Shown: positions 4,921-63,899, numbered from the stretch's first letter. The stretch: DNA of 64,000 nucleotides from Anolis carolinensis (GCF_035594765.1 NC_085843.1:67316201-67380200); one strand, 5' to 3'. The notes: generated by a model not told the origin, from the letters alone. Numbers and translations are program-made.

Positions 4921-5296
4921 ATGATATCAAAATTCAGCTGGGTCTTTGGAATAGTGTCATAATTCTGTGCATTCCCCATTAAAAGATAACATTCTGTAAT
5001 GGCATCATATACAATGTCATTGGCAGCTGGTAACTATTGTATTACTTTAAATGTCATATTTGACTTATCTTACAGCATAGATGGATAAATAGATTGATAG
5101 GTAGATAGAGAGATAGATATTGCTCTTTGGCAGCAGGTGTCCAAAACAGCTAATGTTTTTAAAAGGCAAGCTTCCACTTAAGCAAAAGGTCTATCCTTCT
5201 TTGTAATAACTTTACACATATTTATATAATGGAAGGAAAAAGGAAGAGAGGACGACCATGGGCAAGATGGATGGATGGTATCCTTGAAGTGAATGT

Positions 5297-5329
5297 GTTG
5301 TACTTGCGCCAAGGGGCAGTTCTGGTACT

Positions 5330-5361
<32 letters not shown>

Positions 5362-6111
5362 CAGTATTTATATTCCGCCCGTCTCAGCCCGAAGGGGACT
5401 CAGGGCGGATCACATTACACATATAAGGCAAACATTCAATGCCTTAACATAGAACAAAGACAAGACAAACACGGGGCTCCGAGCTGGCCTCGAACTCATG
5501 ACCTCCTGGTCAGAGTGATTCATTGCAGCTGGCTGCAGCTGCTTGCTCAACAGCCTGCGCCACAGCCCAGTAAAATTGCTAGTAGGAGGAAAAGGGATAA
5601 TGCTGAGCAGGTGTTTGATGAGGAACAGCAAGTAAAGCGGATTCGGGAAATACTTATGGCTCCTACTGATGAGGAGACGTTTGAAGGCTTCTCTAGTGAG
5701 GAGGACTCAATGGAGGAAGATGATGGGTTAACAGAAAGTAGAGGAACTAAGAGGTCAACTCGGGAGCAAGAGTCAGATGAGGAAAGGGAAAGAAAGAAGA
5801 TTCGTGATATACTTACTGCTCCCACGGAAGATGAAACGTTTGAAGGTTTTTCTGGGGATGATGGGTCTGAGAGTGGGATGGAAGATGCTGCAGATTGGAC
5901 TCAAGTAAATGTGTGTGCAGCACCAGATTCTGAGGGTGCATCGGGAGACTAGCATGCTACTGGTACACCAGAGACATGGGGAGATCTAAATCTTGAACAA
6001 AGATGGCGTGATTGGAGGGCTGGTGGGCGAGGTTCACATATGAGATCAAGATCAGCTGTGGATAATGATAACAGGGCGGAGGCCTCATCATCATCAGACT
6101 CCGAGGTGTAA
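5297..6111 (+). pseudogene. LTR(U3)-encoded acidic ORF with two FxGF motifs, disrupted by a SINE and one TAG (5950-5952)
   Basis: VVLAPRGSSGT / SKIASRRKR..IREILMAPTDEETFEGF..IRDILTAPTEDETFEGF..TWGDLNLEQRWRDWR..MRSRSAVD..SDSEV*; colinear with copy 2. Confidence 0.8.
5331..5568 (-). mobile_element. Anolis SINE2-type SINE (tRNA-like head, L2-like tail), short variant
   Basis: Reverse complement matches the head (gggctgtggcgcaggctgttgagc) and the tail (gtgatccgccctgagtccccttcggg...aatataaatactgtaaataaa) of the copy at 11447-11909. Confidence 0.85.
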
Positions 6112-6259
6112 GTTAAAAGTGGAATTGAAAGTGAAGGTCCCTTGCAGAAGGCAAGGTGTCGTTTTTGGGACATTGCTTTTCGCTGCCTGTTCTCCTTGGG
6201 TCATGGCTGTACAGTTTCATGTTCTGAATCCGGATTGATTCCTGCTTTGGTGTTCTTGA

Positions 6260-6595
6260 CTTGGCATTTCTGGCTTGCCGTTCCTGGCTTCTGAATCCAG
6301 TTTGGCTCCTGACGACAGCGTTCGTTCCTGCTTTGGCGTCCCTGGCTTGGCATTTCTGGCTCCTGAATCCAGTTTGGCTCCTGACGACAGCATTCGTTCC
6401 TGGCTTGGCGTTCCTGGCTCCTGAATCCAGTTTGGCTCCTGACGACAGCGTTTTGCTCCTGGCTTGGCGATTCCAACTTGGTGTTTCTGGCTTCCACTGG
6501 CTCCTGAATCCGGTCTGCTTCCTGACGACAACAGTGTTTGCTCCTGGCTTGGCATTTTTGGCACCTTTTGGCTTTTGAACTTGGCTTGGCTTTTG
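6260..6595. repeat. Imperfect tandem repeats inside LTR A copy 1 (core ggctcctgaatccagtttggctcctgacgacagc)
   Basis: About four copies with variable spacers, directly visible. Confidence 0.85.
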
Positions 6596-7704
6596 GCAAC
6601 GGTATCATTTGCACTCATTATTTAAGAGCGTTTGGCGCTTCCCTGACTCTGTGCCACAGCATAGCGTGGCGCTTGTTTCAGTGAATGTTTTAGTTACATT
6701 TGAACCGGATTATCAAGCTACATAATCTGGGTTATCTTTCTGATCCTGTTTTGTGCCTTTTCTTGAAGCAAAGATGTTTACTTTTGGTGGAAACACTGAA
6801 GTTAAGTGTTTATGAGTTCTATTTATCATTTAATAAACATTTGCTGACTTTATTTATTGTGTGTGGCTCTTTAAGAGGAGTCTGTATCGTGATAGAATGG
6901 CTTCACCTTGAAGGAGCTGGGGATGGCGACGGCCGACAGGGAACTCTGGCATGGACTGGACCATGAGGTCACAAAGAGTCGAAAACGACTGAGTGAATGA
7001 AGAGAGCTATATGGGATTCAATACATATAGCAATTGTTTTTGTTTAGACCTGCATGACTAATTTCCAGGTTCCTAGAAAAATGTGCTTGATTGTGACTGA
7101 ATAGTGTTCTCTGAAGTTGAAAAATAGTAATTCTCTGAATTCTCGGCCTTCATTTATCACTCTTATCTGCTTTACTACACTTTTCAAAATGTTCATTCTC
7201 AAATTTACCTTTCTATAGTGACTAACAGCTAGTAGAATTTAGATTTTTATTTCTAAAGGGTACCCTTTATGTTGATTGTATCTTCCTAAGAGATCCCAGT
7301 GAAATGCCACTGAAGAGATTTACCCTGAGGTTGCCTTAGAGTAATTTATGTGATTTATTTTGCACAACTTAGCAATAATCATTAAAGTTCATTAGATTAG
7401 AGGGAGAATCATTGTCACACTGTCATCCGGATGCATGGGCTAATTTCAGTGGTGATGCTTAGTGTTTTAATTATGCAAACCTCCCCACTCCTTTACATCC
7501 CACACTTCTAATGAACTGCTCAAAGGAGCTTGAAAACTCAACAATTTTACGTTACACAATGGATTTTATGCATATATTTGTGTGAAAGAAAGGGAGAGTA
7601 TACAGGCATTGTTACATACAGCAGACTGTTAATAGTCTGAACTGGTCCCAGTTCATCAGTTTGGGCCATAGTAACAAGAGTTTCAATGTATAGTTACCAT
7701 GTAG

Positions 7705-8296
7705 GGCTGTGTGGGTTCTATTTTACATAAGCACGGCTGCAAGATTAACATTGTCAAAAGTATGGAAAGGGAAGGAAATCCCTACCATGGAAGACTGGGT
7801 ACTGAAAGTATTGGATATAATACAAATGGATATCCTAACTCAAAAGATAAAAGAAGGGAAAAACAGAATGGACTGGTCCAGTTTCATAAAATTTATTTAA
7901 AAAAAAAAAGGAATGGATTTTAAGATAGATCTGACTCATATATAAAGAAACTCTTTTTTGGACTACTTTTTTGGAATCCTGGGTAGAGAGAGATCTGGAA
8001 AATAAGAATCTCCAAAGAATGAAAGAAGAAATCCTAAAGTGCTGATGGGAAGTCTTCCTCTGTTTTTTTTTGGGGGGGGGAGGGGGAGAGGGGGTTGTCG
8101 TTTTTTTTGTTTTTTGGGGTTTTTTGTGGGGTTTTTCTGTTGTCCCTCTCTCTCCCCCACTCACCCACCTCCTACTACCCCAAACTTTCCCAATTCAAAC
8201 GATCTTATTCTCCAACTGTGTCTTTATCCCTTTCTAATTATTCCCTCATATAGCTGTATTTATGATTCACAAAAGAAATAAAATTATTTACAAAAA
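7705..8296 (+). mobile_element. L1 3' end fragment
   Basis: TAARLTLSKVWKGKEIPTMEDW...DWSSFIKFI is an L1 ORF2 C-terminus; G-rich then pyrimidine-rich UTR; AATAAA plus A-rich end. Confidence 0.8.
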
Positions 8297-9119
8297 CATA
8301 AGAATCAAATGCACTGTTGAAGGATTACTTTATCAGTGGAATTATGGCTAATAAAATTTGATGATTGATGAGATGTGGTGTAGGAAATAAATAAATAATA
8401 GTCAGGTATCCTAAAAACAGCATTTTTATAAGATACATAAAGTTGTTGTACAGCTTTATTTGGCATTGATACAGCCTACTTTGGCTCTGGGCATCACCAG
8501 GACAAGCTGATACTATATTCACAGCTCATACAGTCACAGCACCACTCTGCTTGGCACTGTATGATCCCCAAGTATAATGTTGTGTAAGAAACACTACAAG
8601 CCATGCTAGATACTAAAATCTGGAAACCAATAATGATGTGGAGCCCTTTCATATTACACAGTTATAGCAGCATGATGTCACTTTAACTGCGATGGCTAAA
8701 TCCCATAGAATCCTGGGGTTTGCAGATAAGAGCTCTCTGGATGACAGTTGTATAACCTTCGAATTCTTGGATTCTATAAGATGTCACGACTGGACTTATC
8801 GTCAGGGGAAACCCTTTTTTTTTTATAAGATGTATACGTGACAGTTAATGTAGAGAGTGCTGTAGGTGCTATAGTTTTTCAGGTGCTTTTTTGATATCAA
8901 ATGTAGTGATGGCAACCCAAGGGAGAGAGGATTCCTCCCCCCCCCCGCTCATTTCTTTTAGTGTGGATTAGCAGTAGGGACTCCCTTGCATTTGAGGGAG
9001 TCTCAATAAGGACACCAGTTGGGGCTGATCCAACATCAGGCATGTTGGATCAGGCCCTGATTATGGGTCTGTATAGAAGAACCCTCTTGCTGATGTAAAA
9101 ACTGTATGAAGGACTAGAA

Positions 9120-9680: not shown

Positions 9681-9834
9681 GGTGGCAGACTGAGGGCCCA
9701 TCCAGACAGGCCTTTAAAACAAGACCTGTTTCACTTTTACTAGAGGCATCCAAAAGACACTTCTGGTAAAACTGAATTAATTTGGATTAAACCAGGATTT
9801 CCCTAGTTTGATCCAAATTAATTAGACACCCCAT

Positions 9835-10801: not shown

Positions 10802-10846
<45 letters not shown>
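10802..10846. repeat. (TCTA)n microsatellite at an L2 tail
   Basis: Direct observation. Confidence 0.95.
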
Positions 10847-10978
10847 TTCCATCATTTCTACCCCACCCTTCTCACCCGAGGGGACTCAGGGCAGCTTACA
10901 AACTGGCAATTAATGCCGATACACCATAATACAATAAAATAAAACATTAAAACAGTTAAAACAGTGTAATATACAATA

Positions 10979-11446: not shown

Positions 11447-11909
11447 GGCCGGGCTGTGGCGCAGGCTGTTGAGCAGCTGCAATAAATCACTCTGACCATG
11501 AGGTCATGAGTTCGAGGCCAGCCCGTGGCGGGCTGAGCACCCGTCAATTAAGAATAAAAAATAGCCCCTGCTCGTTGCTGACCTGGCAACCCGAAAGATA
11601 GTTGCATCTATCAAGTAGGAAATAAGGTACCACTTATAAAAAAGTGGGGAGGCAAGTTTAACTAATTTATGGCCTGGAATGAGGAACTGCCTTCAGAGTG
11701 GATGATGAAGCAGCTGCTCCCCCCTGTGGCCAGAATCGAACATCTCCTCAGGAAAAGGTTAAATTGCCTCTGCGTCTGTCTGTCTCGGTCTCTGTTTGAT
11801 GTGTTTATGGGCATTGTGTGTTTGCCCTATGTGTGATCCGCCCTGAGTCCCCTTCGGGGTGAGAAGGGCGGAATATAAATACTGTAAATAAATAAATAAA
11901 TAAAATAAA
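11447..11909 (+). mobile_element. Anolis SINE2-type SINE, full length
   Basis: Pol III-like head (tgtggcgcagg...gagttcgaggcc), L2-like 3' end, (TAAA)n tail. Confidence 0.9.
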
Positions 11910-12760
11910 TGGAGCCTGCCGGATGTCGCTGGGGAGGGAGTTTCACAGCCGAGGAGCCACCACTGAGAAGGCCCTGTCTCTCGTCCGCACCAGCTGCACT
12001 TGTGAGGCGGGTGGGATCGAGAGCAGGGCCTCCCCAGATGATCTTAAAGTTCCCGTAGGCCAACCTCTGCATAAGATGTAGAACACAATAATATGACATG
12101 TGACAGGACAGAAGATTTTTAGATCTGGATGCCTCCGCACTGAAGCCTTGTGAGTGGGTGAATTGTTTGCATTGGTCAAAGGAGTTATGTCTCAAGCAGA
12201 GCTCTGGCTCTCAGTGATTTAACTGATTTAAGAATTGGTGTCCAAAGGAAGATCAAAATGTGATGTAGATAAAATTATTTTAGGTTAGTGCTCTGATCCA
12301 ACTTTATACAACGCAATTTGTGCCTTGCAATGCTACACACTTCAGAAAATTTGGAACAGGTTGTTTTTTTTTTTTGTTACACTGACTTGGATTATACCAG
12401 ATTTTTCATCCCTAATGTTTAAACTCAGTTGATACTCAAATGGAGGTATTGTTTTTGCCACTTCCAATGTCTTGCAGAGCTTACAGAGAATTTAATTTGG
12501 CATCCAGGGAGATCTTACTTAGCTGATGGCAAACTTAACAGACATCAAAGGAGCCAATCTTTTACTTTAAAATAGAAATAGTCAATCATTAAGATTGATC
12601 CAAGTTATTTAGATTGTATCAGATGGTTTGTAATTGAAACAAACTTGAAGCAGCTTTGGAAAATCTAACAAGGTACATTACAATGTCTGCTATCAATCAT
12701 AATAATCTAGCAGATACATTTTTTTTTTGCTGTGTCAAGTTCCCAAAGACTTTTTTTTAC

Positions 12761-13605
12761 CTCCTTCTCTGGAGGTTAGTAAACAGAGATAAAAGAAAAC
12801 TACTACAAGATAGTATGGAAATGGTATTTGACCCCAATAAAGATACATAATATGGATAAGAGTTTTTCGGAAAAATGTTGGAGGGTTGTCAAGAAAGGGG
12901 GACATATATTCATATATGGTGGGAATGTAAGTATGTACAGAGTTTTTGGGGAAAGGTCATAGTAGAAATAGAGAGTATCATGAAGAAAAAATTAATACAA
13001 ACCCAGCGACTATACTATTATCTATTTGTAATACAGATGAATGGAAAGAAAATGAAAAGAATTTGGTAACAATGTTGCTAACGGTTGCAAGGTTATTAAT
13101 AGCAAGAAATTGGAAAAGGGAGGTGGAAATTAAAATAGAAGATTGGTACAAGGAAATTTGGAAATTAGCAATAAATGATAAATTAACATGCAATTTAAAT
13201 GTCAAAAAAGGCGTAAGAAAGAAAAATGATTTTGAAAGTATATGGAAGAAATTTATTGAAGAAACATTAAGGAGAGAAGATGGGAATAGACCCCCACCAG
13301 AAGAAATGAGGTTCTGGTTGGACTATAAAGAAATGGACTCCGGTGATGGGGAGCAGAACGGGTAGAACACTGGGGGAAGGAAAAGACTTGAATTGTAAAG
13401 AATTTTCTTTTCTTTGTAACAAAATTAATAGTAATGTAATAAAAAATATTTTTTAAAAAGTAAACAGAGATTGGATGGAGAGCCATCTCTTGGGGTTTCT
13501 CTCATTCTTGCCATTAAAACCTTCGACAATACTTTGCTCTAATTGTTTGCATGACAGGGTTTTGGACTGGATGACCCTTGTGGTCTCTTTCAAGTCTATG
13601 ATTCT
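12761..13605 (+). mobile_element. CR1 3' end remnant split by an L1 insertion
   Basis: ctccttctctggagg..aaacagag..tggatgg..ccatct, then ggactggatgacccttgtggtctctttcaagtctatgattct. Confidence 0.7.
12791..13458 (+). mobile_element. L1 3' end, 5'-truncated insertion
   Basis: Zinc-knuckle region GCQERGTYIHIWWECKYVQSFW and LLTVARLLIARNWK; A-rich end; 13-bp TSD AGTAAACAGAGAT (12778-12790, 13459-13471). Confidence 0.9.
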
Positions 13606-14272
13606 GTCATGCTAGGTTTACCTTAGAGTAACCAAAAATTGAAGTCAATTTGAATGACAATAATAAAATTGGAAAGAAACAGGAACAAAAATTGTGTCTT
13701 TCCAGTATTTTTAGTTAATCTCTTATCTATATATATAAAAGGGTGATGGAATCGCGGCACTGAGCAAAACAACAAAAGTAAAGGCCCCCCAACCTTGAAA
13801 TTTGACAACACAACCCATCATCCACGCCTTAAGGTTGAAACAACAAAAAATCACGTCACACACCTCCACATGAACAGAACCCACAACACACCATCGGGAG
13901 CCATGCCGGGAGGGAAAGAGAAAGCATAATGGCCGCCGGCAAGAGGGAAGGCAGGCAATGGGAAAAAGCTGTCCCCTGGGTCCTAGCGCTCGCCCATCAT
14001 CAGAATTATTTATCTCCACTATCCCTTATCCAACCTTCTACAATATCCAACCCATTTTAATAATATTTTAAATATATGCTATGAACCATGACAATCAACA
14101 CAATCTGACTCCTAATATTTTAACAAGCTTAAAATCACAACACCAAATGAAAAACAACACTCTTAAAACACAGGAATACCAGACATTAAACAATCAGGGC
14201 CAGCTAACACCTCCCATGATCTGCCATGCAGGACACAATCCGAGCACTCCCAACAGATAGCCACCCAGCCTC

Positions 14273-14694: not shown

Positions 14695-15145
14695 TCGACA
14701 AACTCCTGACAGATGGCCAGCCAATATCTCCACAATCTCCACCATAAAAATAATAATAGTATCCTACAGTCACAGAGATAGGAGAGACCCCTAAAGGCCA
14801 TCCAGTCCAACCCCTTCCTGCCATGGAGAACACAATCCAAACACTCCTGACAGATGGCCAGCCAATATCTCCACAATCTCCACCATAAAAATAATAATAA
14901 AATCCTACAGTCACAGAGATAGGAGAGACTCCTAAAGGCCATCCAGTCCAACCTCTTCCTGCCATGGAGAACACAATCCAAACATTCCCAACAGATGGCC
15001 ATACAGCCTCTTGATAATAATAATGCTAATAACAATATCACGGAATCCTCATGTTTGCAGACAGCCCTAAGAATCATCCAGTACAACCTCCTTCTACCAT
15101 GCAAGACCACACAATCCAAACACTCCTGACAGATGGCCATCCACC
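14695..15145. repeat. Tandem ~140-bp repeats built on a CR1 3'-end fragment inside Helitron 1
   Basis: Recurrent aaggccatccagtccaacc...acacaatccaaacactcctgacagatggcc, similar to the CR1 end at 38870-39004. Confidence 0.75.
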
Positions 15146-15526
15146 CACTATATAATAATAATGATGATAATAAAGATAATAATCATGATGATAACAGCAA
15201 CAATGATAATAATAATAATAATCATACAACTATACCATCCAATAATTTAGAGACACCCCTAACGGCCATCCACCCCAACCCTTTCTACTATGCACCAAGA
15301 CACAATCTAACCATTCACAACACTTGGACAATGTATGCATACTATACAATACTACACAGCGACAAAGACCCCCTCTACTCTCACCACTTTCACATTACAC
15401 AAACAACCAAATACATACTAAACATAAAGACAACCATACAACAGACATTCAATACCATCACTAGCTCAAATTTCTCACCAACACCACCAGACAACGCCAC
15501 AGCAACGTGTGGCCGGGCACAGCTAG

Positions 15527-17804
15527 TCTATATATATATTAAAGGATAAAGTTGTTTGCAGAGTGACTATAACAACAAAACTAAACGCCCCAGTAATACA
15601 AAACTTGGCAACACAATGCCAAAGCCTTCCCTCCCAGTTGTAACAACACAACCACACCACAAAACCACAATCCAGACCCACAAAACTCACAACAACGCAT
15701 CGTGACTATAACAACACAACTAAACGCCCCAGAAATACAAAACTTGACAACACAACACAAAAGCCTTGCCTCCCAGTTGTAACAACACAACCACACCACA
15801 AAACCACAATCCGGACCCACAAAACTCACAACAACACATCATGACTATAACAACACAACTAAATGCCCCAGAAATATTAAACTTGGCACACAACTAAATG
15901 CTCCAGAAATACAAAACTTGACAACACAACGCAAAAGCCTTGCCTCCCCGTTGTAACAACACAACCACACCACAAAACCACAATCTGGACCCACAAAACT
16001 CACAACAACGCATCGTGACTATAACAACACAACTAAATGCCCCAGAAATATGAAACTTGCCAACACAACGCAAAAGCCTTCCCTCCCAGTTGTAACAACA
16101 CAACCACACCACAAAACCACAATCCAGACCCACAAAACTCACAACAACGCATCGTGACTATAACAACACAACTAAACGCCCCAGAAATACAAAACTTGAC
16201 AACACAACACAAAAGCCTTGCCTCCCAGTTGTAACAACACAACCACACCACAAAACCACAATCCGGACCCACAAAACTCACAACAACACATCATGACTAT
16301 AACAACACAACTAAATGCCCCAGAAATATTAAACTTGGCACACAACTAAATGCTCCAGAAATACAAAACTTGACAACACAACGCAAAAGCCTTGCCTCCC
16401 CGTTGTAACAATACAACCACACCACAAAACCACAATCTGGACCCACAAAACTCACAACAACGCATCGTGACTATAACAACACAACTAAATGCCCCAGAAA
16501 TATGAAACTTGCCAACACAACGCAAAAGCCTTGCCTACCGGTTGTAACAACACAACCACACCACAAAACCACAATCTGGACCCACAAAACTCACAACAAC
16601 GCATCGTGACTATAACAACACAACTAAATGCCCCAGAAATATGAAACTTGCCAACACAACGCAAAAGCCTTGCCTACCGGTTGTAACAACACAACCACAC
16701 CACAAAACCACAATCCTGACCCACAAAACTCACAACAACGCATCGTGACTATAACAGCACAACTAAACTGTATGGCCATCTGTCTGAGGGGTTTGGGTGG
16801 GGTCTTCCTCCATGACAAAAAGAAAGAAAGGGGTTGGGCTTGATGAAAACTACAAATCCCAGCACCCCATGGCATGGAGTCCATGCATTTCAATTAGAGG
16901 CCTCTTCCTTCTCCCTTTCCCCGCCATCCAACCCACTGACCCAGTTCCATGGCTCCGCAGGCAGGAAAGGCTGGGACGGATAGAACGAAGGAAGGAGGGA
17001 AGGGAAGCGAAGGAACGCCAAGGACAAGAGCCCTCCCTCTCTGCCTGGAAGGCCAAGAGCAAAAGGGAGAGAAAGACCATTGATCCAGTTATATTTACCC
17101 TCCTTTCTGACCAGTGTGTTCTTATCAGCGAGCTCAGGATTGGAGCAGAGAAAGGAATAGCATAGGAATAAAGGAAACAAGGAGAGCACCCACTCTATCT
17201 ATCCATCTACTCATCTATCCATCCACTCACCCACTAATAATAAACACCTACACAGGCAAGATTCATCCATGCTCTGAGTCTGCAAGGCCATTCAGTGCTC
17301 ATCCACCTCCCAATCCCTACATTCACACTTGGCCTCCAAAAAAAACAATGACAATAATAACAATGACAACAACAACAATAAGAATCAACACCATCACAGG
17401 CAAGAAGCAGCCAGGCACTGAGGCTGAGAGGCCAGTCAGTGCTACACTGGGCCTCCAAAAAAAATACAGTAGCATCTACCTTATCCAACCTTCATGACCA
17501 CAACAACAACAACAATAATAAACACCTACACAGGCAAAACAAAAAAAAAAGACTATTGTACCACAATAAAAAATATAAACCGCACTCAGCAGAATCAGAC
17601 ATCACGATTAACAACAAACCAAAGACAATAGGGATCTCAAGCAATTATCAATCACCACAAAAATTGAAGAAGGTAACAGACTTCAAATACTACTACTAAT
17701 GTGAGTAAAAAGAAGGGTGGAGGTGACAGCATAAATACAACCCAATGTAGACTGACCAACACCACCAGACTAAGCCACAGCAACACGTGGCCGGGCACAG
17801 CTAG
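15527..17804 (+). mobile_element. Non-autonomous Helitron 2, directly abutting Helitron 1
   Basis: TCTATATATAT start immediately after the CTAG of Helitron 1; ends GCCACAGCAACACGTGGC..CTAG|T; 17545-17804 is homologous to the 3' end of Helitron 3. Confidence 0.9.
15563..16768. repeat. 139-bp minisatellite with 452-bp higher-order structure
   Basis: Unit starts at 15563, 15702, 15841, 16015, 16154, 16293, 16467, 16606 and 16745. Confidence 0.95.
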
Positions 17805-23880: not shown

Positions 23881-24844
23881 TGTCAAGACCCAGGCTGCAG
23901 AGCACCAATAACCATACACAGAGGCCAGAATCTATCTAATATCTTTATTGAAGGAGTATATAAAGTTAATAAAAACAAGTGTAGAAAATAGTCCAGAATT
24001 AGACCTTTCAGGAAAGGTCAAAATTAGTCCAAAGAAACAATGTCCAATATGAAATATTAAGGTCCAAAGTTGTAATCCAATAACCGAAACACTCACTTTG
24101 CCAGGCAAAGTGAGGGGAGATGACAAGGTCCTTTAGTCCATGAACTTGAGCGAGGCTATGGAGTAACTTGAAACAAGGCTTGGTACAAGGCAGCAAAGGA
24201 ACGAGAAGCAAGGACAAGATCAGTGGAATTACTTGGCAAAATCCGGGAAACAAGGCAAGGCTGAGTCCTGGAAAAACAAGGCTAAGTCCTAGGAAACAAG
24301 GCAAGATCCGTGGAGGTAAACAAGGCTGAAAACGGGAACGAAGGCTTGGAAACAGGAACGAAGGCTTGGAAACAGGAGCGCGCTGTCCACACACAACTTA
24401 CTCCCGTAGCTGACGAATTGACTCCGCAAGAACCCTTTGTGGGCAAAACACCTAAATAGGGTCTAGTTTTCCCACCAAAGAGCAGTTCTCTGGGGAACCA
24501 GAAACGAAAGCTAATCTCTGAGTCCAGATGCATGACTCCTTAAAGTTTCCCATGGAAAGCAGGCTTAATCAGCTGAATACTTAGCAGCTATCCTAGCACT
24601 CCTGCGAGACGCTGCTTGAACTCCCCTCTGTTGTTTACAAAACTCGTGGCGAGAAAACACAGGAGATTTAGGCTCAGGGCTTGTTTGACAGACTTCTGGA
24701 AGACAAATCTCTTGCAGGTGCAAGGTTCCCAAATCTGGCTGGGAAAGTTCCAAATCTGACTGAGACGGTGAAAAACCCAAGTTTTCCTCTTCATCTGGCA
24801 CTACAGTGCCAGGAATGGGACTACATGGCCCATGACTCATCACA
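23881..24844 (-). mobile_element. Solo LTR, family B (probably Gypsy-type)
   Basis: TG...CA termini; 5-bp TSD CCCGG (23876-23880, 24845-24849); minus-strand AATAAA near 23945; internal short tandem repeats. Confidence 0.9.
24565..24843 (-). CDS. LTR(U3)-encoded 92-codon frame (EEENLGF ... RRSARIA), possibly the pol/integrase tail
   Basis: Open from LTR base 2; same length as, and gaplessly alignable with, 35303-35581. Expression from this solo LTR is not shown. Confidence 0.6.
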   Translation of the reverse strand: MMSHGPCSPIPGTVVPDEEENLGFSPSQSDLELSQPDLGTLHLQEICLPEVCQTSPEPKSPVFSRHEFCKQQRGVQAASRRSARIAAKYSAD

Positions 24845-42372: not shown

Positions 42373-42403
<31 letters not shown>

Positions 42404-42734
42404 TGCATTTATATCCCGCCCTTCTCACCCCAAAGGGGAATCAGAGTGGCTTACAAATTAAATTTAAATACAATATTATATTATTAACATAGCACGAGAC
42501 TGGCAATAAATTACCATATTGTACTATATCTATATATTGTAATATTATTATTAATATTACATGTAATATATGATATATAATTTATATTAATATATTATAT
42601 TATTAGTATTATATTTTATTACAAAATAATATTAATATTATATGCATATACAATATATTATAATATATATTATTGTAAATTATATTGTATATATGTATAT
42701 ATGTATATATGCATGTGTGTATACAAACACATAT

Positions 42735-43670: not shown

Positions 43671-43671
43671 A

Positions 43672-44222: not shown

Positions 44223-44440
44223 TATTTATTTATTTATTTACAGTATTTATATTCCGCCCTTCTCACCCCGAAGGGGACTCAGGGCGGATCACATTATAAC
44301 ACACATAGGGCAAACATTCAATGCCCATAAACACATCAAACAGAGACTGAGAGACACACACGCAGAGGCAAGTTAACTTTCTTCTGAGGGGATGTTCGAT
44401 TCTGGCCACAGGGGGGAGCAGCTGCTTCATCATCCACACT
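44223..44440 (-). mobile_element. Anolis SINE2-type SINE, 3' half
   Basis: Reverse complement matches 11697-11900. Confidence 0.88.
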
Positions 44441-55734: not shown

Positions 55735-57780
55735 GATGCCCTCTCCAACCCCGCCGAAATTGGTCTCCTTGGTTCACTGAGGAACTTTGACCGATGAAGC
55801 GGGAAAAGAGACAGCTAAAGGGCGTGTGGCGACAACTCCGTGACAGAGAATTGAGATCAGCTTACAGGGCATTTATGGAGTCCTATGAGCATGCTATCAT
55901 CGAAGCAAAGCGAGTATATTATGCTTCACTAGCTCACGCCTGGCAAAATTGTTCAAAATAATTCGATCTCTAACGACGGTCCCTACTGTCCCAAAAAATG
56001 ATTATCAGGTTCTTTAAGCCAAGGCCTTTCAGAGCTATTTTGCAGACAAGATCTCGCTACTACGCCAGGACCTCCCCGCCACAATTGATACAATGAGAGA
56101 ACTTGAGACTCTGTGGCCACTTGCTGGGCCCACCCTTGATCGGTTCATCCTGCTGGATGCAGAGGCTGTTGATAGGCTTATAGCTGCAGCTAGACCGACC
56201 ACTTGCTCCCTCGATCCATGTCCCTCTTGGTTAGTGAAATCCTGCTTGGAGGGATTATGCAACCCTCTGTTGAAGATAATAAACAGCTCCCTTGAGCAAG
56301 GAGTTTTTCCAGAGGGTTTAAAAAAGGCTGTTGTCTCTGCCCTGCTGAAGAAACCAGATCTAGATCGCTCGATTCCCTCCAGCTACCGCCCAGTTTCGAA
56401 TCTTTCGTTTCTGAGCAAGATGATTGAGAGGGCAGTAGCGGAGCAGTTGCAGCAGTTCCTAGACGACACAGTTGGACTGGATCCCTTCCAGTCCAGCTTC
56501 CGTGTGGGGCACGGGACTGAGACAGTGTTGGTCTCAATCACAGATCATCTTTGATGCCAGCTCGACCAGGGCGGATTGGCGCTGCTTGTGTTATTGGATC
56601 TCACAGCAGTATTTGACACAGTTGATTATAATCTTTTGACCCACCGCCTGGCCGTTGTTGGAGTCAGGGGGACAGCTTTAAATTGGCTGACCTCCTTCCT
56701 TCAAAACCATGGACAGCAAGTGGAGAGGGGAGGCCTGGTCTCTGAAAGGTACTCTCTATTTTGTGGGGTTCCTCAGGGGGCCATCCTCTCCCCTCTGCTG
56801 TTTAACATCTATATGCAACCACTTGCTCAGCTGGTTCGAGATTTCGGGCTTGAGTGCTACCAGTACACTGATGACACTCAGCTTGTGTTGAAGATGGAAG
56901 GCCGACCAGACTCTGTACCCAATAACTTTCATCAATGTCTCGAGGCCGTTACTGGATGACTACGTGCCAGCAGGTTGAGGGTGAATCCAGCAAAGACAGA
57001 GATCTTATGGCTGGGCCGACCGGGCAATGGGGATATCCAGTTGCCTACCCTGGATGGTGAGGCACTATGCCCGTCATCACTGGTAAGGAGTCTGGGAGTC
57101 CTTTTGGACCCTTTGTTGACAATGGAGGCCCAGGTCTCCACCATTGGCAGTACCGCCTTTTTTCATCTGCAGCAGGTTAGACGGCTGGCCCCCTATCTGT
57201 CTAGAGACAACCTAGCCACAGTGATCCAGGCCATGGCCATCTCAAGACTGGACTACTGTAACACCCTCTACATTGGCCTTCCTCTGTCGGTGATCCAGAA
57301 GCTCAAGTTGGTACAAAATGCAGTGGCTCGGCTTCTTGCAGGAGTCCCGTTGAGATGCCACATAACACCAATCTTATTACCACTGGTTACCAATTGAGCA
57401 CCAGATCGCCTTCAAAGTGATGGTACTTACCTTTAAGGCCTTACATGGTCTGGGGCCGATGTACCTGAGGGACCATCTCACCCCCTACTAACCCCAGAGA
57501 TCCCTCCGTTCTGAGGACCAAGACATATTGGTTCCTAGTTTTAAGATCTTGTGCCTAACATCAACTAGACGCAGAGCCTTTACAGCAGTGGCACCATCAC
57601 TTTGGAACACACTGCCACCTGAAGTTTGTGCCTTGTGGGACATATCAGTCTTCCGCAGGGCATGTAAGACACACCTGTTTTGGCAGGCTTTTGATTTCTG
57701 TTATTACTGTTTTTAAATTGTTTTAGATTTTACTATGTTTTGGCAGCCCTAGGGGAGTGGCGGCATATAAGTTCGAAGAA

Positions 57781-57815: not shown

Positions 57816-60800
57816 AATGTAGAGGAAAACAAACCCTGGTAATGGCTGAGAAAGAGCATATGATGCAGCAAGTACAGCTGCACTCAGCCCCATTGCCCCC
57901 ACAGAGAGATTGCTTGCTTCAACCTGGAAAAAATTATCAGGATATACTAATGAAACTAACAAATATTTCTGGAATTTTGTGTGTGAAGCTGTTTTGCTTC
58001 ATTTGGGCTGGTGTTTGTGTGTGTGTGTGTGTGTGTGTAGAGGGGGCGCGCATTTTTTTTGGCAGTTCATATCTACAAATTGCCAAATTTGTCTGAAATC
58101 TGAATCAGACATGCAAAGTTTTGCACAGTATTAAATACCCTCTGGCTCCACCCTATCATGTGCAGTGTCTTAGCACACAGAGCCTCATGCAAACATCTCT
58201 GTTCTCTATCCCGCTATCCCAGTGCCATTTAATACACACCTTCCTCTGTTCAATTTGCAAGTACAGAAAGGTGTTAATGAAGGAGGCAGAAATGTTTTTC
58301 CAGATCACTCAGGCCACTGGCAAAGATACAATGAACTGGGCATAGTTTCTCATACATTTTAAATGTCCCATATAATTATAACTAGAACTGTGTCACTAAT
58401 TTTCTATCATTTTTTCTATTTCCAAGCTGGGGGAACAATGTTTCAATGGGAAGGGCCAAAAATAATTGAACTGTAAATTAACTTGGTTAACTACTAAACA
58501 ATATATAGCCTCATTGGGCTATTTGTTGCTTCTGTTCCACAAAGACACCAGGATACTGCATGTAGCTTTTAGATATCTCCATTTGTTTTAAGATTAAGAC
58601 CAGATCTACTAAATTTATTGTGGATATATGAATAATGTGTTTCACAGACTGAAAAATTACACAAATTGAATTAAGTGTGTTGTAGCCAACAGCAACTGAA
58701 ATTAAAATATACACTTATTGTCTATGCTAAGGATTTAAAAAGGGTCCCAGTTTGAGAAGTTCCCTAGTGGGAAAATCTCTTATGATTAATTTGAATGCCT
58801 AAAGTAAACAACTAAAGCCACAGTGGAGCAACTGTCAGCTTAGCTACCAGTGTAACAAAGGAATGATATGCTGTCAACAACTTATTTATAGAGCAGAGGA
58901 TTTAAAAAATGTGTAAATATTACAATAATGTCAAGTGAAGCTTCCACTTGCCATGCTGATATGCCTTTGTAAAATGCATTGGGAATCGAAGTCTACATTT
59001 TGCTTGAAGCATCACAGATTAGATGGGTTACAAATATGCATAACATTTAGCATAGGAATGGCTCTCAAAGATCTAACTACCACCCTTTAAGTTTTATGCA
59101 TATCAGTTATCCTCTGTTATTCCTTGTTCTTCATGATCCCTATAAAATCATTGCTAGCAATTTAGTTAACCAATTGTAAGTTTCTACGAGTCATACAGTG
59201 TGGGGTGGAGAAAACCTTACCTGGCTTTGAGCAATCAGCAATGCTAATCCTGCATTGAAGACAGGAGAATGAGTTGTGATGCCCTAATCAGACAGTGACA
59301 TGGGGCAGGCATGACATAAGTATGTACATTGCCAGTAACTCTCACATGTAGTATAACGGCATCTTGCTTCTGGTCTCCTTCCTACAGAGATGATCATAGT
59401 GAGTGCTGACATCATGTGTCCAGGGATTCTAGTGATAGGAATCATTGCAACATTTAGAAAAGTGCATATTTTGAATATTAATTGAGTTTCCTTTCATATA
59501 TTGATTCAAAAGTGCATAATTATGTGAATTATTAGTAATAGTTTATAGCAAACAATGAAGTGAATTCATTTCTCCACATTCCTCTCTACTACATGTTCCA
59601 GTCCTAAGTCTATGGGCACATCTACATTAACCACTTAAGTGTGTTTCAAACAGATATTGAAGAAAGTGGTTTTGCTGTGCAGATGACTGTCAGAGTTTGG
59701 AAGTAACTGGCATATATAAAATCGTAAATTGCTGGATCATTCAGACCTAGCCACATAATGAAATGCTGTGCCACTCAGGCCTAGGCCTAGTCATTTAGTA
59801 AAGCGCTGTGTCACCATGATTAGTGGCTGAAGCAACGGAGGAGGTATAAAAGCAAGTATTTCCCATGTGCTCAATGATGATGGGCAGATGATGGAGAACT
59901 GTGAGAGTAGTTGATGAATATAGAGCTAGAAAGTGTGTTTTGTATATATCTGTACACATCTTCTGCAACTATTGAAGATAAAGCCTACCTGCATAAGGAA
60001 AGAACAACTGTGTTTGTAGTCTGTGTTGTTCTTGCAGTGCCATTCATACACCACACAGAGGGAGCTTGGATTCTAACTAGATTGGGGCTTGGAGACACTT
60101 CCAGCACTCTATTAAGGCCTTGGAAATATCTGACAATGACTACATCTAAAATACTGGAACCAGTTTGAGTCTCGTATGGCAATTACACAAGCCACACAGC
60201 ACTGACATTCATTAAGGGCTTTCTTTTACATGCTTTTGTGGAAGTTCCTGATTAAATGATCAATGTAGGGCCTTTAATTCAGAATATATGGGATAGAGAA
60301 GAATTCTGGGTTGTTTTCTTTTTCCCATGAAATTGTCTGATTCCTCATTTCTGAACCAACATGAGAATAGACAAATAAAAGGTCCTTCAAAATTCACCGC
60401 TTTGTGCATTTTATTAGATTTTCCTGTACAGTGGAGTAAAAAGCCTGCAGAACTTTGCCAAGAATATAATCAATTTTAACAGAAACTAATTAAATATATA
60501 AATAACACTGTTACTTTGAAAATCCACCATAGATACCATAAATAATTTCCAATACCTTCACTAGAAGTCTTTTTGTTATCACCCTACTCTATTTAAACTG
60601 TTCAGCAGATAACTATGTTTTGCTATTGCTCAATTTTTGCTTCTTCCCATCTGTTTATATTTTACACCTTTGGTGCTTTGTCACTTCTTCTCCTCCGCTT
60701 GTGTTCCTTTCATTTCTCCGGTTTTCAACAAATCTTTCTCCTTTCTTTCACTAACTGAACAGGTGGCAAGCCAGCTGGTAGTAGAATGAAAAATTAAAAG

Positions 60801-61574
60801 CAGTGTACAATGTGAACATAAGAAACAGGAAATCAGACAGGAGTGGGAGGGCGAGCAGTAGGATGGGACAAGAATGGTATTTGCAATGAATATGTCATGG
60901 GAGCAAGCTTGAGTTAATTAACTACTAAAGTACTTCCTAAATCTGATACCTGCATTTTGACAGATAAGTTAATTGAATGCCTGTTCAATGCCATATCATA
61001 TGCTAATCAGAAGTAATTCAAAAATTATATATTTGTACCATTTTCCACATGGATGATCATCTTCTACTTAGTTGAGTTCAGACATAGGTCAGTGAATAAT
61101 GAGTTGTTTTTTTAAAAAAACAAGTGTTTTATTAAGCCTTTTTGTTTTTACTGAAATATTAATATTATAATATGTCTGAAGTGCTATCACTTTGCAGTAT
61201 GCATCCACTTAACCTAAATATCTCATGCTTCCTTCATCTCAAAATGCTTGATTCTATGCTTCTTGAACCAAAATAAGGAAAAATAAGGAAAAGATATATA
61301 GGAGGACTATGGAATAAGAGGCGGGGAGGAAGAGATGAAAGGGAAGGATGACCCTTAGAAAATATTGAAAAAATGAAGTGGTCAGGAAATAAAATGGAAA
61401 GCAAAAGAGGAGTTATGACTGAATTTAGTGTAGCTTCACAGTCTGTACATGCTATGTATTCTTTTCCAGACCTAGATGTTGCACATTTCAGGTTTCAAAG
61501 TATAGTGGAGTCAATGATTTGTAGCTGAAAATGTTTACAATGACACCTCAGAAGGTCCAGAGTTTTTGAGATGC

Positions 61575-61730
61575 AGTTGTTCTGTGCAAGTCAGTTCTGA
61601 CTTATGAAACCTTCAAAGCAACCCTATCACAGGGTTCTCTGTGGCTAAAATGGTGTGATTTGCTCAAGATCATAAAGTGGCTTTCTATGGTTGAACCCTG
61701 ATCTCTAGAGTTGTAGTCCAATGCTCATTA
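61575..61730 (-). mobile_element. Old tRNA-derived SINE remnant
   Basis: Similar to 4730-4920. Confidence 0.6.
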
Positions 61731-62177
61731 ATATAAATAAATGCTCTCAACAACAAATGTTCAGATGATAAACAAGAATATATATACAATAACATGAGAA
61801 CCATTTGCACAAGGAAATGAGAAACATTTATTTAATCCTGATTTGATGCAAATAATATGCATAAAAGCTTAAAACTTGAAAACCGCATGAGGTGCAGAGC
61901 TGAGTCACTGCCTGACATTTTACCAGAATGGAGCTACTGTACAGGACATATTCATAACATGTCCTGTGGGCTGACTGTGATGTACAGAGACAAACTCCTA
62001 CAGGCTCAGCATGAAAGACTTTGAATTTCTTGTGAAACTGAATGAGAAAGTATTCTATTAAGGTATTTTATTGAGACTTTTGAATACTGGTACTAGAAAC
62101 TATGTAAAACAGTACAGAAAGGAGAAACTATTCAGAATTTCCTTTTAATGGGCAAACAAGATTTTTTTATATATACA

Positions 62178-62500
62178 CAGTAGAGTCTCACTTATCCAAC
62201 ATAAATGGGCCGGCAGAACGTTGGATAAGTGAATATCTTGGATAATAAGGAGGGATTAAGGAAAAGCCTATTAAACATCAAATTAGGTTATGATTTTACA
62301 AATTAAGCACCAAAACATCATGTTATACAGCAAATTTGACAGAAAAGGTAGTTCAATACGCAGTAACGCTATGTAGTAACTACTGTATTTATGAATTTAG
62401 CACCAAAATGTCACGATGTTTTGAAAACATTGACTACAAAAATGCCTTGGATAATCCAGAACGTTGGATAAGCGAGTGTTGGATAAGTGAGACTCTACTG
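62178..62500. mobile_element. Tc1/mariner/pogo-type MITE
   Basis: Perfect TIR CAGTAGAGTCTCACTTATCCAACA; homologous to 33059-33381. Confidence 0.92.
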
Positions 62501-62677
62501 TGTATATATAAGGGCTTTCTTTTACATGCTTTTGTGGAAGTTCCTGATTAAATGATCAATGTAGGGCCTTTAATTCAGAATATATGGGATAGAGAAGAAT
62601 TCTATATATATATACTTTTTAATAGTAGCATCAGCAAGATATTGGTCAATGTTATATATTGGACTGAAGTAGCTCAT

Positions 62678-63253
62678 GTTGTAGTTGGGCCAAGGGGCAG
62701 TAATGGTTCTATGGGTGAAACAGCTAGAAGGAGAAAAAGGGCTAATAGAGAGCAGGTGCTTGATGAAGAATAACAAGTAAAGCGGGTCCGGGAAATACTT
62801 ATGGCTCCTTCAGAGGATGAGACGTTTTATGGGTTTTCTAGTGATGAGGAGTCCATACTAGATGATGATGATTTCACAGAGAGTAGAGGAACTAAAAGGT
62901 CTACTCGAGAGCAGGAGTCGGATGAGGAAAGAGAAAGGAAAAAGATCCGGGATATACTCACTGCTCCCACTGATGAGGAGACTTTCAAGGGGTTCTCTGG
63001 GAATGATGGGTCTGGGAGTGAGATGGAGAATGCTGATTGGACACAAGTAAATGTAGATGATGAGCCAGTTCATGGGGCTGCATCAGGAGTTTGGCAAGCC
63101 TCTCATACTTCTGGGACATGGGGAGATCTAAATCTTGAACGGAGATGGAGGGACTGGAGGGATGAGAGGCAAGGTCCACTAACAAGATCAAGATCAGCTG
63201 TGATTGATGAGGAAAGGGCGGAGGTCTCATCAGCATCGGACTCCGATGAGTAA
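62678..63253 (+). pseudogene. LTR(U3)-encoded acidic ORF with two FxGF motifs; one premature TAA (62771-62773), 62801-63253 still open
   Basis: VVVGPRGSNGSMGETARRRKR..VREILMAPSEDETFYGF..IRDILTAPTDEETFKGF..TWGDLNLERRWRDWR..LTRSRSAVID..SDSDE*. Confidence 0.82.
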
Positions 63254-63431
63254 GTTAAAAGTAGAGTTTAGAGAACTATTGCCTTGCAGAAGGCAAGGTG
63301 TCGTTTTGGGGACATTGCTTTGTCGCTGCCTGTTCTCCTTGGGTCCTGGCTGTACAGCTTCCTGATAATCCGGATTGAATCCTGCTTCAGTGTTCCTGGC
63401 TTCTGACTCCAGTTCGGCTCCTGACAACGCC

Positions 63432-63710
63432 GTTTTCAGTTTGGCGTTTCTTTTGGCTTTCCTGCTTCGATATTTCCAGTTTGGCGTTTGCTTTGGCGTT
63501 CTTGCTCCAGCGTTTCCAGTTTGGCGTTTGCCTTTGCGTTTCTGCTCCAGCGTTTCCAATTTGGCATTTGCCTTGGCGTTCCTTCTCCAGCGCTTCCAGT
63601 TTGGAGTTTGCCTTGGTGTTTCTACTCCAGCGTTTCCAGTTTGGCGTTTGCCTTGGCGTTCCTGCTCCAGCGTTTCCAGTTCGGCGTTTGCCTTGGCGTT
63701 CCTGCTTTGG
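63432..63710. repeat. 39-bp tandem repeat in LTR A copy 2 (ccagtttggcgtttgccttggcgttcctgctccagcgttt)
   Basis: About seven copies, directly visible. Confidence 0.9.
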
Positions 63711-63899
63711 CATCCCTGCTTTGGCACTTCTAAGTTAAGTGTTTCTGAGTTTAAAATATCATTTAATAAACATTTAAGAACTTTCCTTAATGTGTGTGGC
63801 TTTTTAAGAGCTGTATCACGACAGCTCACCTTTTTTCTTTGGCTCAGCACTAAGATTACCTTATGTGTAGTGTGTCACAAAACTGCGATCTGCAGAGGA

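What the first reader, a model, noticed from the sequence alone, without database searches (positions are those of the whole stretch)
5296..63823. All four solo LTRs are open in the same register from their second base, suggesting pol/integrase reads into the 3' LTR
Seen: the LTR starts read T|GTT GTA CTT (5296), T|GTT GTA GTT (62677), T|GTG ATG AGT (24844, minus) and T|GTA GTG TCT (35582, minus). In each case this is the conserved frame, beginning with Val, and family C has no ATG near the edge. The frames stop just upstream of the TATA-like box, so the LTR's own promoter could not transcribe them. Inference: they are the C-terminal tail of an internal ORF, most likely integrase, crossing the polypurine tract into U3 (an arrangement like nef or sag). 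U3 would then act as a swappable cassette of integrase targeting motifs. Established precedent for tail-based targeting: Ty5-Sir4, Ty1-AC40, MLV-BET and chromovirus chromodomains.
Basis: partly seen in the sequence, partly recalled or inferred. Interest (0 to 1): 0.8.

Follow-up and report, generated by a model that had tools for sequence, protein, structure and literature searches.

The report
Integrase tails encoded inside lizard LTRs
In these lizard (Anolis-type) Ty3/Gypsy retrotransposons the polymerase/integrase gene runs across the polypurine tract and ends 90-190 codons inside the 3' LTR, and that LTR-encoded tail carries short motifs that look like host chromatin-tethering signals, so the four solo LTRs in the window still show the relic of that tail.

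Summary
The observation mostly holds. LTRs B and C are open for exactly 92 codons from LTR base 2. A2 is open for 190 codons apart from one in-frame TAA. A1 has the same frame, but a nested SINE and a TAG break it. The frame is truly coding: A1 versus A2 gives dN/dS 0.33.

Three two-LTR Anolis carolinensis elements (L001, L005, L006) and one Podarcis element (L004) carry a pol frame (RT-RNaseH-integrase). That frame crosses the polypurine tract, enters the 3' LTR at base 2 and stops just before the TATA-like box. The L001-type tail is homologous to the window's family A tail. I could not obtain full-length copies of A, B or C themselves.

The new point is what the tails contain. Family A has two helix-acidic-FxGF modules that match the LEDGF/HRP2 IBD-binding consensus D/ExExFxGF exactly. 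B, C and the Podarcis family end in RRSAR[L/I], the core of the HMGN/Dsup motif that binds the nucleosome acidic patch.

An ORF that extends into the 3' LTR and carries a targeting motif is already known from plant CRM chromoviruses. This is therefore a new vertebrate variant of a known kind. Any tethering function is inferred from the motifs, not shown.

The parts
5296..6895 (+). Solo LTR A1 (family A), TG..TA ends, TSD GAATG, inserted in the 3' end of a LINE ORF
   Evidence: direct reading; 80.5% identical to A2 over 694 nt
5332..5569 (-). tRNA-type SINE nested in the A1 tail ORF; it shifts the frame (approximate borders)
   Evidence: 92% match to a SINE in L001
5569..6111 (+). A1 tail ORF after the SINE: 127 codons, TAG at 5950-5952, 52 codons, stop at 6109-6111; D/ExExFxGF motifs at 5668-5691 and 5827-5850
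62677..63823 (+). Solo LTR A2 (family A), TG..CA, TSD GCTCA
   Evidence: direct reading
62678..63253 (+). A2 tail ORF from LTR base 2: 31 codons, TAA at 62771-62773, 159 codons, stop at 63251-63253 followed at once by GTTAAAAG; D/ExExFxGF motifs at 62813-62836 and 62972-62995; predicted helix just before the second motif
63431..63706 (+). 40-nt tandem array in the non-coding part of LTR A2 (A1 has 72/58-nt units at 6252-6474); AATAAA near 63768
23881..24844 (-). Solo LTR B, TG..CA, TSD CCGGG
   Evidence: direct reading
24565..24843 (-). B tail ORF, 92 codons from LTR base 2 plus stop; RRSARI at 24606->24589, 8 residues before the end
34719..35582 (-). Solo LTR C, TG..CA, TSD GTGTC/GTGTT; its 3' part is 76% identical to B (23929-24031 vs 34769-34871)
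35303..35581 (-). C tail ORF, 92 codons from LTR base 2 plus stop; RRSARL at 35344->35327. The frame happens to stay open about 105 codons upstream into flanking DNA, which has no retroelement similarity

Best explanation
The four LTRs belong to a squamate lineage of Ty3/Gypsy elements related to chromoviruses. In this lineage the pol reading frame does not stop before the polypurine tract. The tract itself is coding (R-G-D-G/S). The frame enters the 3' LTR at its second base (nnT|GTn, hence Val) and runs 92-190 codons through U3, stopping 0-120 nt before the TATA-like box.

U3 of the 3' LTR is part of the genomic RNA, so this stretch is translated as the extreme C-terminus of integrase, after its SH3-like (GPY/F) domain. 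In a solo LTR or a 5' LTR it is only a silent copy. That much is shown for relatives and inferred by homology for the window's families.

The tail is disordered and carries short linear motifs:
- Family A (and the Anolis L001 type) has one or two modules made of a short helix, an acidic linker and FxGF. These fit the D/ExExFxGF consensus that cellular partners use to bind the integrase-binding (TND) domain of LEDGF/p75 and HRP2.
- B, C and a Podarcis family end in RRSAR[L/I], the core of the HMGN/Dsup arginine-anchor motif for the nucleosome acidic patch.

My inference is that the tail tethers the integrase-cDNA complex to chromatin. It would do so through an H3K36me3 reader for the FxGF type, or directly on the nucleosome face for the RRSAR type. 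In this it would take over or add to the role of the chromodomain found in the nearest relatives. Because it lies in U3, it is copied to both LTRs at each cycle and travels with the promoter.
For: Coding nature:
- dN/dS is 0.33 between A1 and A2.
- B and C align gaplessly over 92 residues with 24 identities; 0 of 20,000 shuffles reach this.
- Only 2.5% of random positions are followed by 92 or more open codons.

Continuity with pol:
- L001 has a pol ORF of 897 aa with RT, RNase H, H2C2, rve and SH3_Tf2-1 domains that ends 139 codons inside the 3' LTR.
- L005 and L006 have 1,214-codon open frames with the same end.
- More than 15 Anolis UniRef Pol models keep integrase plus tail through to the DSDE[DE]L end.
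- In Podarcis, L004 has the tail of P0124 mapping to both LTRs. The junction reads GGGAGGGGGATGG|TGTGATGG and the stop lies 8 nt before GGATAAAAG. Five P. muralis Pol models are continuous across the junction.
- L003 shows the same junction.

Homology of the window's family A to these tails.

Motifs:
- In a six-frame translation of all 64 kb, D/ExExFxGF occurs only 4 times, all in the A LTR ORFs. RRSAR[LI] occurs only twice, in the B and C ORFs.
- Composition shuffles give 3e-4 and 1.5-3.5e-5.
- FxGF recurs in the tails of three squamate sublineages, and RRSARL in a fourth.
- AF2 puts a helix (pLDDT about 86) just before the second FxGF, in an otherwise disordered chain.

Motif definitions come from PMC8022399, PMC9987994 and PMC12487698.
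Against: - No two-LTR copy of families A, B or C proper was recovered.
- For B and C the link to pol rests on the shared register, the same overall layout and the RRSAR motif. BLASTP against the Podarcis tail is not significant on its own (E 0.07-0.1).
- The L004 copy itself has frame breaks, including one just upstream of the polypurine tract.
- The motifs are 6-8 residues long and no binding was tested.
- The 'GF' sites in B and C do not fit FxGF.
- The helix-to-FxGF linker in family A is about 7 residues, at the short end of the published 8-16.
- The AF2 model is low confidence overall (pLDDT 57).
- Targeting transcribed gene bodies would be an unusual strategy for a retrotransposon whose relatives carry chromodomains.
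Confidence: 0.8

Rival explanations
1. The LTR ORF is a separate accessory gene (like sag or nef), translated from its own start or from a spliced mRNA, and is not part of integrase.
For: B and the L001/L004 types have an ATG at codon 2 (VM...). Gene predictors have called the LTR ORF on its own (P0003, P0001).
Against: The frame is continuous with integrase in L001, L005, L006 and in many Anolis and Podarcis Pol models. C and A have no ATG at the edge. The register is fixed at LTR base 2 in every family. That is what read-through from a coding polypurine tract requires, and an independent gene would not need it.
Confidence: 0.05
2. The tail is translated as part of integrase, but its role is not target-site tethering. 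It could serve nuclear import (basic RRRKR/RRGRK runs), regulate integrase stability or Pol processing, or simply be the tolerated read-out of a U3 enhancer. On this view the motif matches are coincidental or serve another partner, for example other TND proteins.
For: The tails are disordered, acidic and fast-evolving. Basic runs sit near the LTR start. The L003 tail has neither motif. TIM-like motifs can bind several TND proteins (PMC9987994).
Against: The exact D/ExExFxGF and RRSAR[LI] strings are unique to these ORFs in the 64 kb and very unlikely by composition. They are the best-conserved parts of tails that otherwise diverge across Anolis and Podarcis. The tail also sits where relatives and plant CRM elements carry their targeting domain (PMC3059260).
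Confidence: 0.12
3. The open frames are chance or non-coding conservation of U3 regulatory sequence.
For: Solo LTRs are not expressed as such. 2.5% of random positions give 92 open codons.
Against: dN/dS is 0.33, with third-position excess. Four LTRs share the same register. B and C are gapless at the protein level although the rest of their LTRs is full of indels. The frame is demonstrably continuous with pol in relatives.
Confidence: 0.01
4. Some solo-LTR ORFs have been taken over as host coding exons.
For: The Anolis gene models P0001, P0002 and P0004 start or end in such ORFs.
Against: These models are chimeras with LINE or SINE sequence. The A copies in the window carry stops and a SINE. 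There is no orthologue evidence.
Confidence: 0.02

Closest known systems
Plant CRM-clade (group A) chromoviruses, e.g. CRM/Beetle
   Same: The gag-pol ORF extends past the polypurine tract into the 3' LTR, and the LTR encodes the putative integrase targeting domain, the CR motif (PMC3059260, PMC3605345).
   Different: The hosts are plants. The CR motif is unrelated in sequence and its partner is unknown, with centromeric targeting. Here the hosts are squamate reptiles and the tails carry FxGF or RRSAR motifs.
Chromovirus integrase chromodomain (nearest relatives in Podarcis and other vertebrates)
   Same: It occupies the same position after the integrase GPY/F-SH3 module. The nearest non-Anolis integrases carry PF00385.
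   Different: The Anolis L001 type has no chromodomain hit. In Podarcis the chromodomain lies upstream of the polypurine tract and the motif-bearing tail is an extra, LTR-encoded part.
LEDGF/p75-HRP2 IBD (TND) ligands: IBM/TIM of MLL1, JPO2, PogZ, IWS1, ASK, MED1; HIV-1 integrase-LEDGF tethering
   Same: Family A matches the D/ExExFxGF consensus exactly, twice. The motif is preceded by a helix and an acidic Ser/Thr-rich linker, as in TIMs (PMC8022399, PMC9987994). In concept it parallels lentiviral integrase tethering.
   Different: HIV integrase binds the IBD through a folded dimer interface, not a linear motif. No binding data exist here. I found no retrotransposon integrase with FxGF in the paper library.
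HMGN nucleosome-binding motif RRSARLSA; Dsup; yeast Dot5 HMGN-like motif
   Same: B has RRSARIAAK, C has RRSARLAE and Podarcis has RRSARLKA. All contain the RRSAR core whose arginines anchor in the H2A-H2B acidic patch (PMC12487698).
   Different: The motif sits at the end of a retroelement integrase tail and has no other HMGN similarity. It is probably mimicry or convergence. Binding is untested.
MLV integrase C-terminal tail-BET ET domain; Ty5 integrase targeting domain-Sir4
   Same: A short unstructured peptide at the integrase C-terminus determines chromatin tethering.
   Different: Those peptides are encoded upstream of the LTR and have different motifs and partners (from my own knowledge, not tested here).
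Retroviral U3-overlapping genes (HIV nef, MMTV sag)
   Same: There is coding sequence inside U3 of the 3' LTR.
   Different: Those are separate genes with their own starts or spliced mRNAs. Here the U3 coding sequence is the end of pol itself.

Membership tests
Ty3/Gypsy (Metaviridae) LTR retrotransposon | LTRs with TG..CA ends and a short target-site duplication | tested here: met
   All four window LTRs have 5-bp TSDs. L001, L004, L005 and L006 do as well.
Ty3/Gypsy (Metaviridae) LTR retrotransposon | Internal order gag - protease - RT - RNase H - integrase | tested here: met
   Met for the relatives only. L001 ORFs hit Ty3_capsid/DUF4939, RVP_2, RVT_1, RT_RNaseH, Integrase_H2C2, rve and SH3_Tf2-1 in that order. 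The window holds no internal part.
Chromovirus | Chromodomain at the integrase C-terminus | tested here: not met
   The Anolis L001 pol has no PF00385 hit, and the window tails have no Pfam hit. The nearest Podarcis and other relatives do carry PF00385. The lineage therefore derives from chromoviruses, but the Anolis type lacks the defining domain. This could not be tested for A, B and C, which have no internal sequence.
Elements whose pol ORF extends into the 3' LTR (as in plant CRM group A) | An uninterrupted frame from integrase across the polypurine tract into the LTR of a two-LTR element | tested here: met
   Seen in L001, L005 and L006. The Podarcis Pol models plus the L004 LTR mapping show it too. 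For window families A, B and C it is inferred by homology and register, not seen directly.
LEDGF/HRP2 IBD-binding motif (IBM / TIM with FxGF) | Sequence consensus D/E-x-E-x-F-x-G-F | tested here: met
   Family A has DEETFEGF and EDETFEGF (A1), and EDETFYGF and DEETFKGF (A2). B and C do not meet it (NLGF, EMGF).
LEDGF/HRP2 IBD-binding motif (IBM / TIM with FxGF) | Upstream short alpha-helix and acidic, phosphorylatable linker in a disordered region | tested here: inconclusive
   AF2 gives a helix at residues 50-63 (pLDDT about 86), then 7 residues APTDEET, then FKGF. The rest is disordered. The linker is slightly shorter than the published 8-16, and the model is low confidence.
LEDGF/HRP2 IBD-binding motif (IBM / TIM with FxGF) | Physical binding to the IBD/TND | not testable with these tools
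   Needs pull-down, ITC or NMR with the lizard PSIP1/HDGFL2 IBD.
HMGN-type nucleosome-binding motif | RRSARLSA core with the two anchoring arginines | tested here: met
   B has RRSARIAA, C has RRSARLAE and Podarcis P0009/P0124 have RRSARLKA. The RRSAR core is exact, and the last three positions match in part.
HMGN-type nucleosome-binding motif | Acidic-patch-dependent nucleosome binding | not testable with these tools
   Needs EMSA or cryo-EM with wild-type and acidic-patch-mutant nucleosomes.
HMGN protein family (membership proper) | Homology beyond the motif (NLS, full NBD, regulatory C-terminal domain) | tested here: not met
   The B and C ORFs have no Pfam hit at E<=1. The similarity is limited to 6-9 residues.

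The most novel reading that the evidence does not exclude
Squamate Gypsy elements have placed their integrase targeting peptide inside U3 and filled it with mimics of host chromatin motifs. One is a linear LEDGF/HRP2-binding FxGF module. This would be a retrotransposon reaching the lentiviral tethering solution by motif mimicry. The other is an HMGN-type acidic-patch anchor, which would be the first such motif on a mobile-element integrase. Because the peptide lies in the LTR, it can be duplicated (family A has two modules), replaced or exchanged together with the promoter by LTR recombination. One integrase backbone could thus have several interchangeable target specificities.
Probability: 0.4. 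Interest if true: 0.8.

Novelty: new variant of a known kind. Interest (0 to 1): 0.62.

Why it matters
If the tails do tether integrase, they offer a natural, compact set of integrase targeting peptides in a vertebrate. Some would be read by an H3K36me3-reader adaptor and some by the nucleosome surface itself. That makes three questions directly testable:
- how retroelements switch target preference;
- whether use of LEDGF is older and wider than lentiviruses;
- how far the HMGN/Dsup motif is spread ('an untapped realm', PMC12487698).

There is also a practical point for annotation. Open frames at the 5' edge of squamate LTRs are pol tails, not genes, and several Anolis gene models are chimeras built on them.

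Tried and rejected
- Pfam on the five stop-free ORF pieces gave nothing.
- The word search with the C tail gave nothing. With the A2 tail it gave one Anolis gene model, P0001, whose locus is not on record.
- The big profile search with the A tails found only 4 proteins, none of them a Pol. These were chimeric or ORF-only models, but P0004 led to L001.
- tblastn of Pol proteins against the window found no internal Gypsy sequence, so nothing could be tested inside the window.
- Scans for B/C and A relatives in viral contigs, and for a 22-mer shared by the B and C LTRs in metagenome contigs, found nothing.
- BLASTP of B and C against the Podarcis tail aligns only the RRSAR motif.
- The integrase tree was meant to test whether tail type and integrase phylogeny disagree, which would indicate swapping. 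The squamate clade is supported (96/93) but unresolved inside, so there is no verdict.
- I considered and rejected the idea that the open frame upstream of LTR C (35582-35896) is internal element sequence. It has no retroelement similarity, and the LTR has a TSD.
- The window has no N.
Broken frames were searched as separate pieces.


Full report
WHAT IS IN THE WINDOW. The window is lizard DNA. Every protein relative found is from Anolis carolinensis. The sequence is full of LINE, SINE and Helitron pieces. It contains no N, and I took nothing in it or in the fetched loci for human.

The four features are real solo LTRs with TG..CA ends and 5-bp target-site duplications:
- A1: 5296-6895 (+), TSD GAATG.
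- A2: 62677-63823 (+), TSD GCTCA.
- B: 24844->23881 (-), TSD CCGGG.
- C: 35582->34719 (-), TSD GTGTC/GTGTT.

A1 and A2 are one family, 80.5% identical over 694 nt. B and C are related to each other through their 3' parts.

THE OBSERVATION. Reading from LTR base 2:
- B and C are each open for exactly 92 codons.
- A2 is open for 190 codons, with one in-frame TAA at 62771-62773.
- A1 is broken. A SINE of about 238 bp (5332-5569) follows codon 12 and shifts the frame. The homologous frame resumes at 5569, has a TAG at 5950-5952 and stops at 6109-6111.

The title claim is therefore true for B and C, nearly true for A2, and true for A1 only after allowing for the insertion.

In this window 2.5% of random positions are followed by 92 or more open codons, so the coincidence of register is far beyond chance. 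More important, the frame behaves as coding sequence. A1 versus A2 gives dN/dS 0.33 (bootstrap 0.21-0.52), with 24/27/64 differences at codon positions 1/2/3. B and C align over all 92 residues without a gap and with 24 identities, which 0 of 20,000 shuffles reach. The rest of their LTRs needs many gaps. The stops lie 0-120 nt before a TATA-like box, and AATAAA lies near the LTR 3' end.

THE DECISIVE TEST, DONE ON RELATIVES. The window has no internal Gypsy sequence, so I looked outside it. A profile of the family A tails found four proteins among 1.8 billion. None was a Pol, but one was P0004, an A. carolinensis gene model. Its locus, L001 (CM069369.1), holds next to it a full-length element on the minus strand:
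- The LTRs (16697-17751 and 11598-12652) are 99.6% identical, and the TSD is ACTCG.
- The ORFs hit the Ty3 capsid, the protease, RT, RNase H, the integrase zinc finger, the integrase core and the Tf2-type SH3 domain, in that order.
- The RT-RNaseH-integrase ORF (14928->12235, 897 aa) does not stop at the end of the internal region. It reads GAGAGGGGATAG|TGTTATG as ..R-G-D-S|V-M.. and goes on for 138-139 codons inside the 3' LTR, stopping just before CATAAAA.
- The T of the LTR's TGT is the third base of a codon. This is the same register as in all four window LTRs.

This copy has a frame break inside RT, which I only note.

Two more copies on other chromosomes confirm the arrangement. L005 (TSD TTTAC) and L006 (TSD GACCC) have LTRs 99.4-99.5% identical and a single open frame of 1,214 codons that ends at the same place in the 3' LTR. 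A word search with the integrase-plus-tail part found the Anolis UniRef Pol models P0005, P0006 and P0007. Their clusters hold more than 15 models that keep integrase and tail in one frame.

LINK TO THE WINDOW'S FAMILIES. The L001-type tail is homologous to the family A ORF. BLASTP gives 2e-11 and tblastn of P0005 against the window gives 8e-12. In the multiple alignment, the first residues of the L001-type LTR line up with the first module of family A. Family A then has a second, tandem copy of the module.

Pol models P0009, P0119, P0124, P0125 and P0126 read ..chromodomain..P-G-R-G-D-G|V-M-A-W.. and end ..P-R-R-S-A-R-L-K-A.. about 20 residues before the stop.

P. lilfordi locus L004 holds a two-LTR copy (8045-8684 and 13057-13697, 99% identical, TSD AGGAT). 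The last 115 residues of P0124 map to BOTH of its LTRs. The LTR begins TGTGATGG, as does window LTR B. The tail starts at LTR base 2, and the stop is 8 nt before GGATAAAAG. That copy has frame breaks, one of them just upstream of the polypurine tract. Continuity across the junction is seen in the five P. muralis models. A Logan contig of unknown species (L003) has the same junction, AGGGGGGATGG|TGTTGTG, followed by 110 more codons.

For family A the support is homology to demonstrated cases. For B and C it is the shared register, the layout and the shared terminal motif.

WHAT THE TAIL CARRIES. The tails have no Pfam domain and are predicted to be mostly disordered (AF2 mean pLDDT 57).

Family A contains two modules of the form basic/aliphatic helix (..KKIRDIL..), a short acidic Thr/Ser-rich linker, then T-F-x-G-F-S. 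All four instances (5668-5691, 5827-5850, 62813-62836, 62972-62995) fit D/E-x-E-x-F-x-G-F. That is the consensus by which MLL1 and other cellular partners bind the LEDGF/p75 integrase-binding domain (PMC8022399). The layout of helix, acidic linker and FxGF is that of TND-interacting motifs, in which FxGF is the part needed for LEDGF and HRP2 (PMC9987994). AF2 places a confident helix (residues 50-63, pLDDT about 86) just before the second FxGF.

B and C end in RRSARIAAK and RRSARLAE, and the Podarcis family in RRSARLKA. RRSAR is the core of the HMGN motif RRSARLSA and of the related Dsup motif, whose arginines anchor in the H2A-H2B acidic patch (PMC12487698).

In the six-frame translation of the whole window the first pattern occurs four times and the second twice, and only in these ORFs. 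Composition-preserving shuffles of the tails give 3e-4 and 1.5-3.5e-5. FxGF recurs in the tails of three squamate sublineages (Anolis L001 type; Podarcis P0012/15/16; P0021/23/26/31). Chromoviruses outside the squamate clade have short tails of 80-105 residues that hold only the chromodomain.

HOW IT MOST LIKELY WORKS. Two things are shown: the LTR-edge frame is coding, and in related two-LTR elements it is the end of the integrase frame. Translation follows from retroelement biology: U3 of the 3' LTR is in the genomic RNA, so the tail is translated, whereas the copies in 5' and solo LTRs are silent.

What the tail does is inferred from the motifs. I think it tethers the integration complex to chromatin, either through a LEDGF/HRP2-type H3K36me3 reader (FxGF type) or directly on the nucleosome acidic patch (RRSAR type). 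This is the role of the chromodomain in relatives and of the LTR-encoded CR motif in plant CRM elements. I put about 0.9 on the pol-tail reading for family A, about 0.75 for B and C, and about 0.5 on tethering as the function.

The 'swappable cassette' idea is plausible. Related integrases carry different tails, family A has a duplicated module, and the location in U3 allows exchange together with the LTR. But the integrase tree is unresolved inside the squamate clade, so swapping is not demonstrated.

COMPARISON WITH WHAT IS KNOWN. An ORF that crosses the polypurine tract and places the integrase targeting peptide in the 3' LTR is established for plant CRM group A chromoviruses (PMC3059260, PMC3605345). 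That is a closer precedent than nef or sag.

I found no paper in the held library that links a retrotransposon integrase with FxGF or with an HMGN-type motif. This absence concerns that library only. I therefore file the finding as a new variant of a known kind: a known architecture in a new host group with new, recognisable motif content.

LIMITS. Families A, B and C proper remain untested at full length. All functional statements rest on short motifs. 

Noticed in passing
window 14702-16767: There is a large tandem array: 139-nt units with 313/452-nt higher order at 15563-16767, and 141-nt units at 14702-15001. It is very C/A-rich on the + strand (GC skew about -0.44), which causes the composition anomaly at 14-18 kb.
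   Followed up: partly
window 5230-5295 and 6896-7000: LTR A1 is inserted into the 3' end of a LINE ORF2. The two flanks read as one protein tail once the LTR and one TSD copy are removed. LINE RT pieces also lie at 1050-2336 and 56093-57394.
   Followed up: partly
window 32290-32880 (+): There is a Pif1-type helicase fragment (Pif1_2B domain), probably a Helitron remnant.
   Followed up: no
window 5332-5569, 11694-11904, 42385-42458, 44223-44441: There are several copies of one tRNA-type SINE with a (TTTA)n tail. One of them is nested in the A1 tail ORF. A 92% copy is in Anolis locus L001 (5151-5384).
   Followed up: partly
window 63431-63706 vs 6252-6474: Between the stop/TATA region and the poly(A) signal, LTR family A carries a tandem array whose unit differs between the two copies: 40 nt x 6.9 in A2, and 72/58 nt in A1.
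   Followed up: no
window 33058-33382 vs 62177-62501; 60213-60307 vs 62509-62603: Another repeat lies just upstream of A2 (93% identical copy at 33 kb). There is also a perfect 95-nt duplicate 2.3 kb apart. The nature of both is unknown.
   Followed up: no
P0001, P0002, P0004 (Anolis carolinensis gene models); L001 10001-10942: Public gene models are chimeras that begin or end in LTR tail ORFs: LTR ORF plus LINE RT in P0002, and a SINE-derived N-terminus plus LTR ORF in P0004. These are likely annotation artefacts.
   Followed up: partly
window 63130-63175 (A2 tail residues about 120-132); L001/L003/Podarcis tails: A second conserved block, rich in Trp and Arg (..RRW[RK]xWR..), is predicted helical (pLDDT about 76). 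It recurs in Anolis, Podarcis and L003 tails and has no assigned partner.
   Followed up: no
L001 12653-12664, L003, L004 13045-13056: The polypurine tract is itself coding and conserved as R-G-D-G/S across Anolis, Podarcis and an unidentified species. It is therefore under a double constraint, as plus-strand primer and as protein.
   Followed up: partly
L006 1-992: A further LTR of a related family (77% identical to the L006 element's LTRs) lies 4 kb upstream of that element.
   Followed up: no
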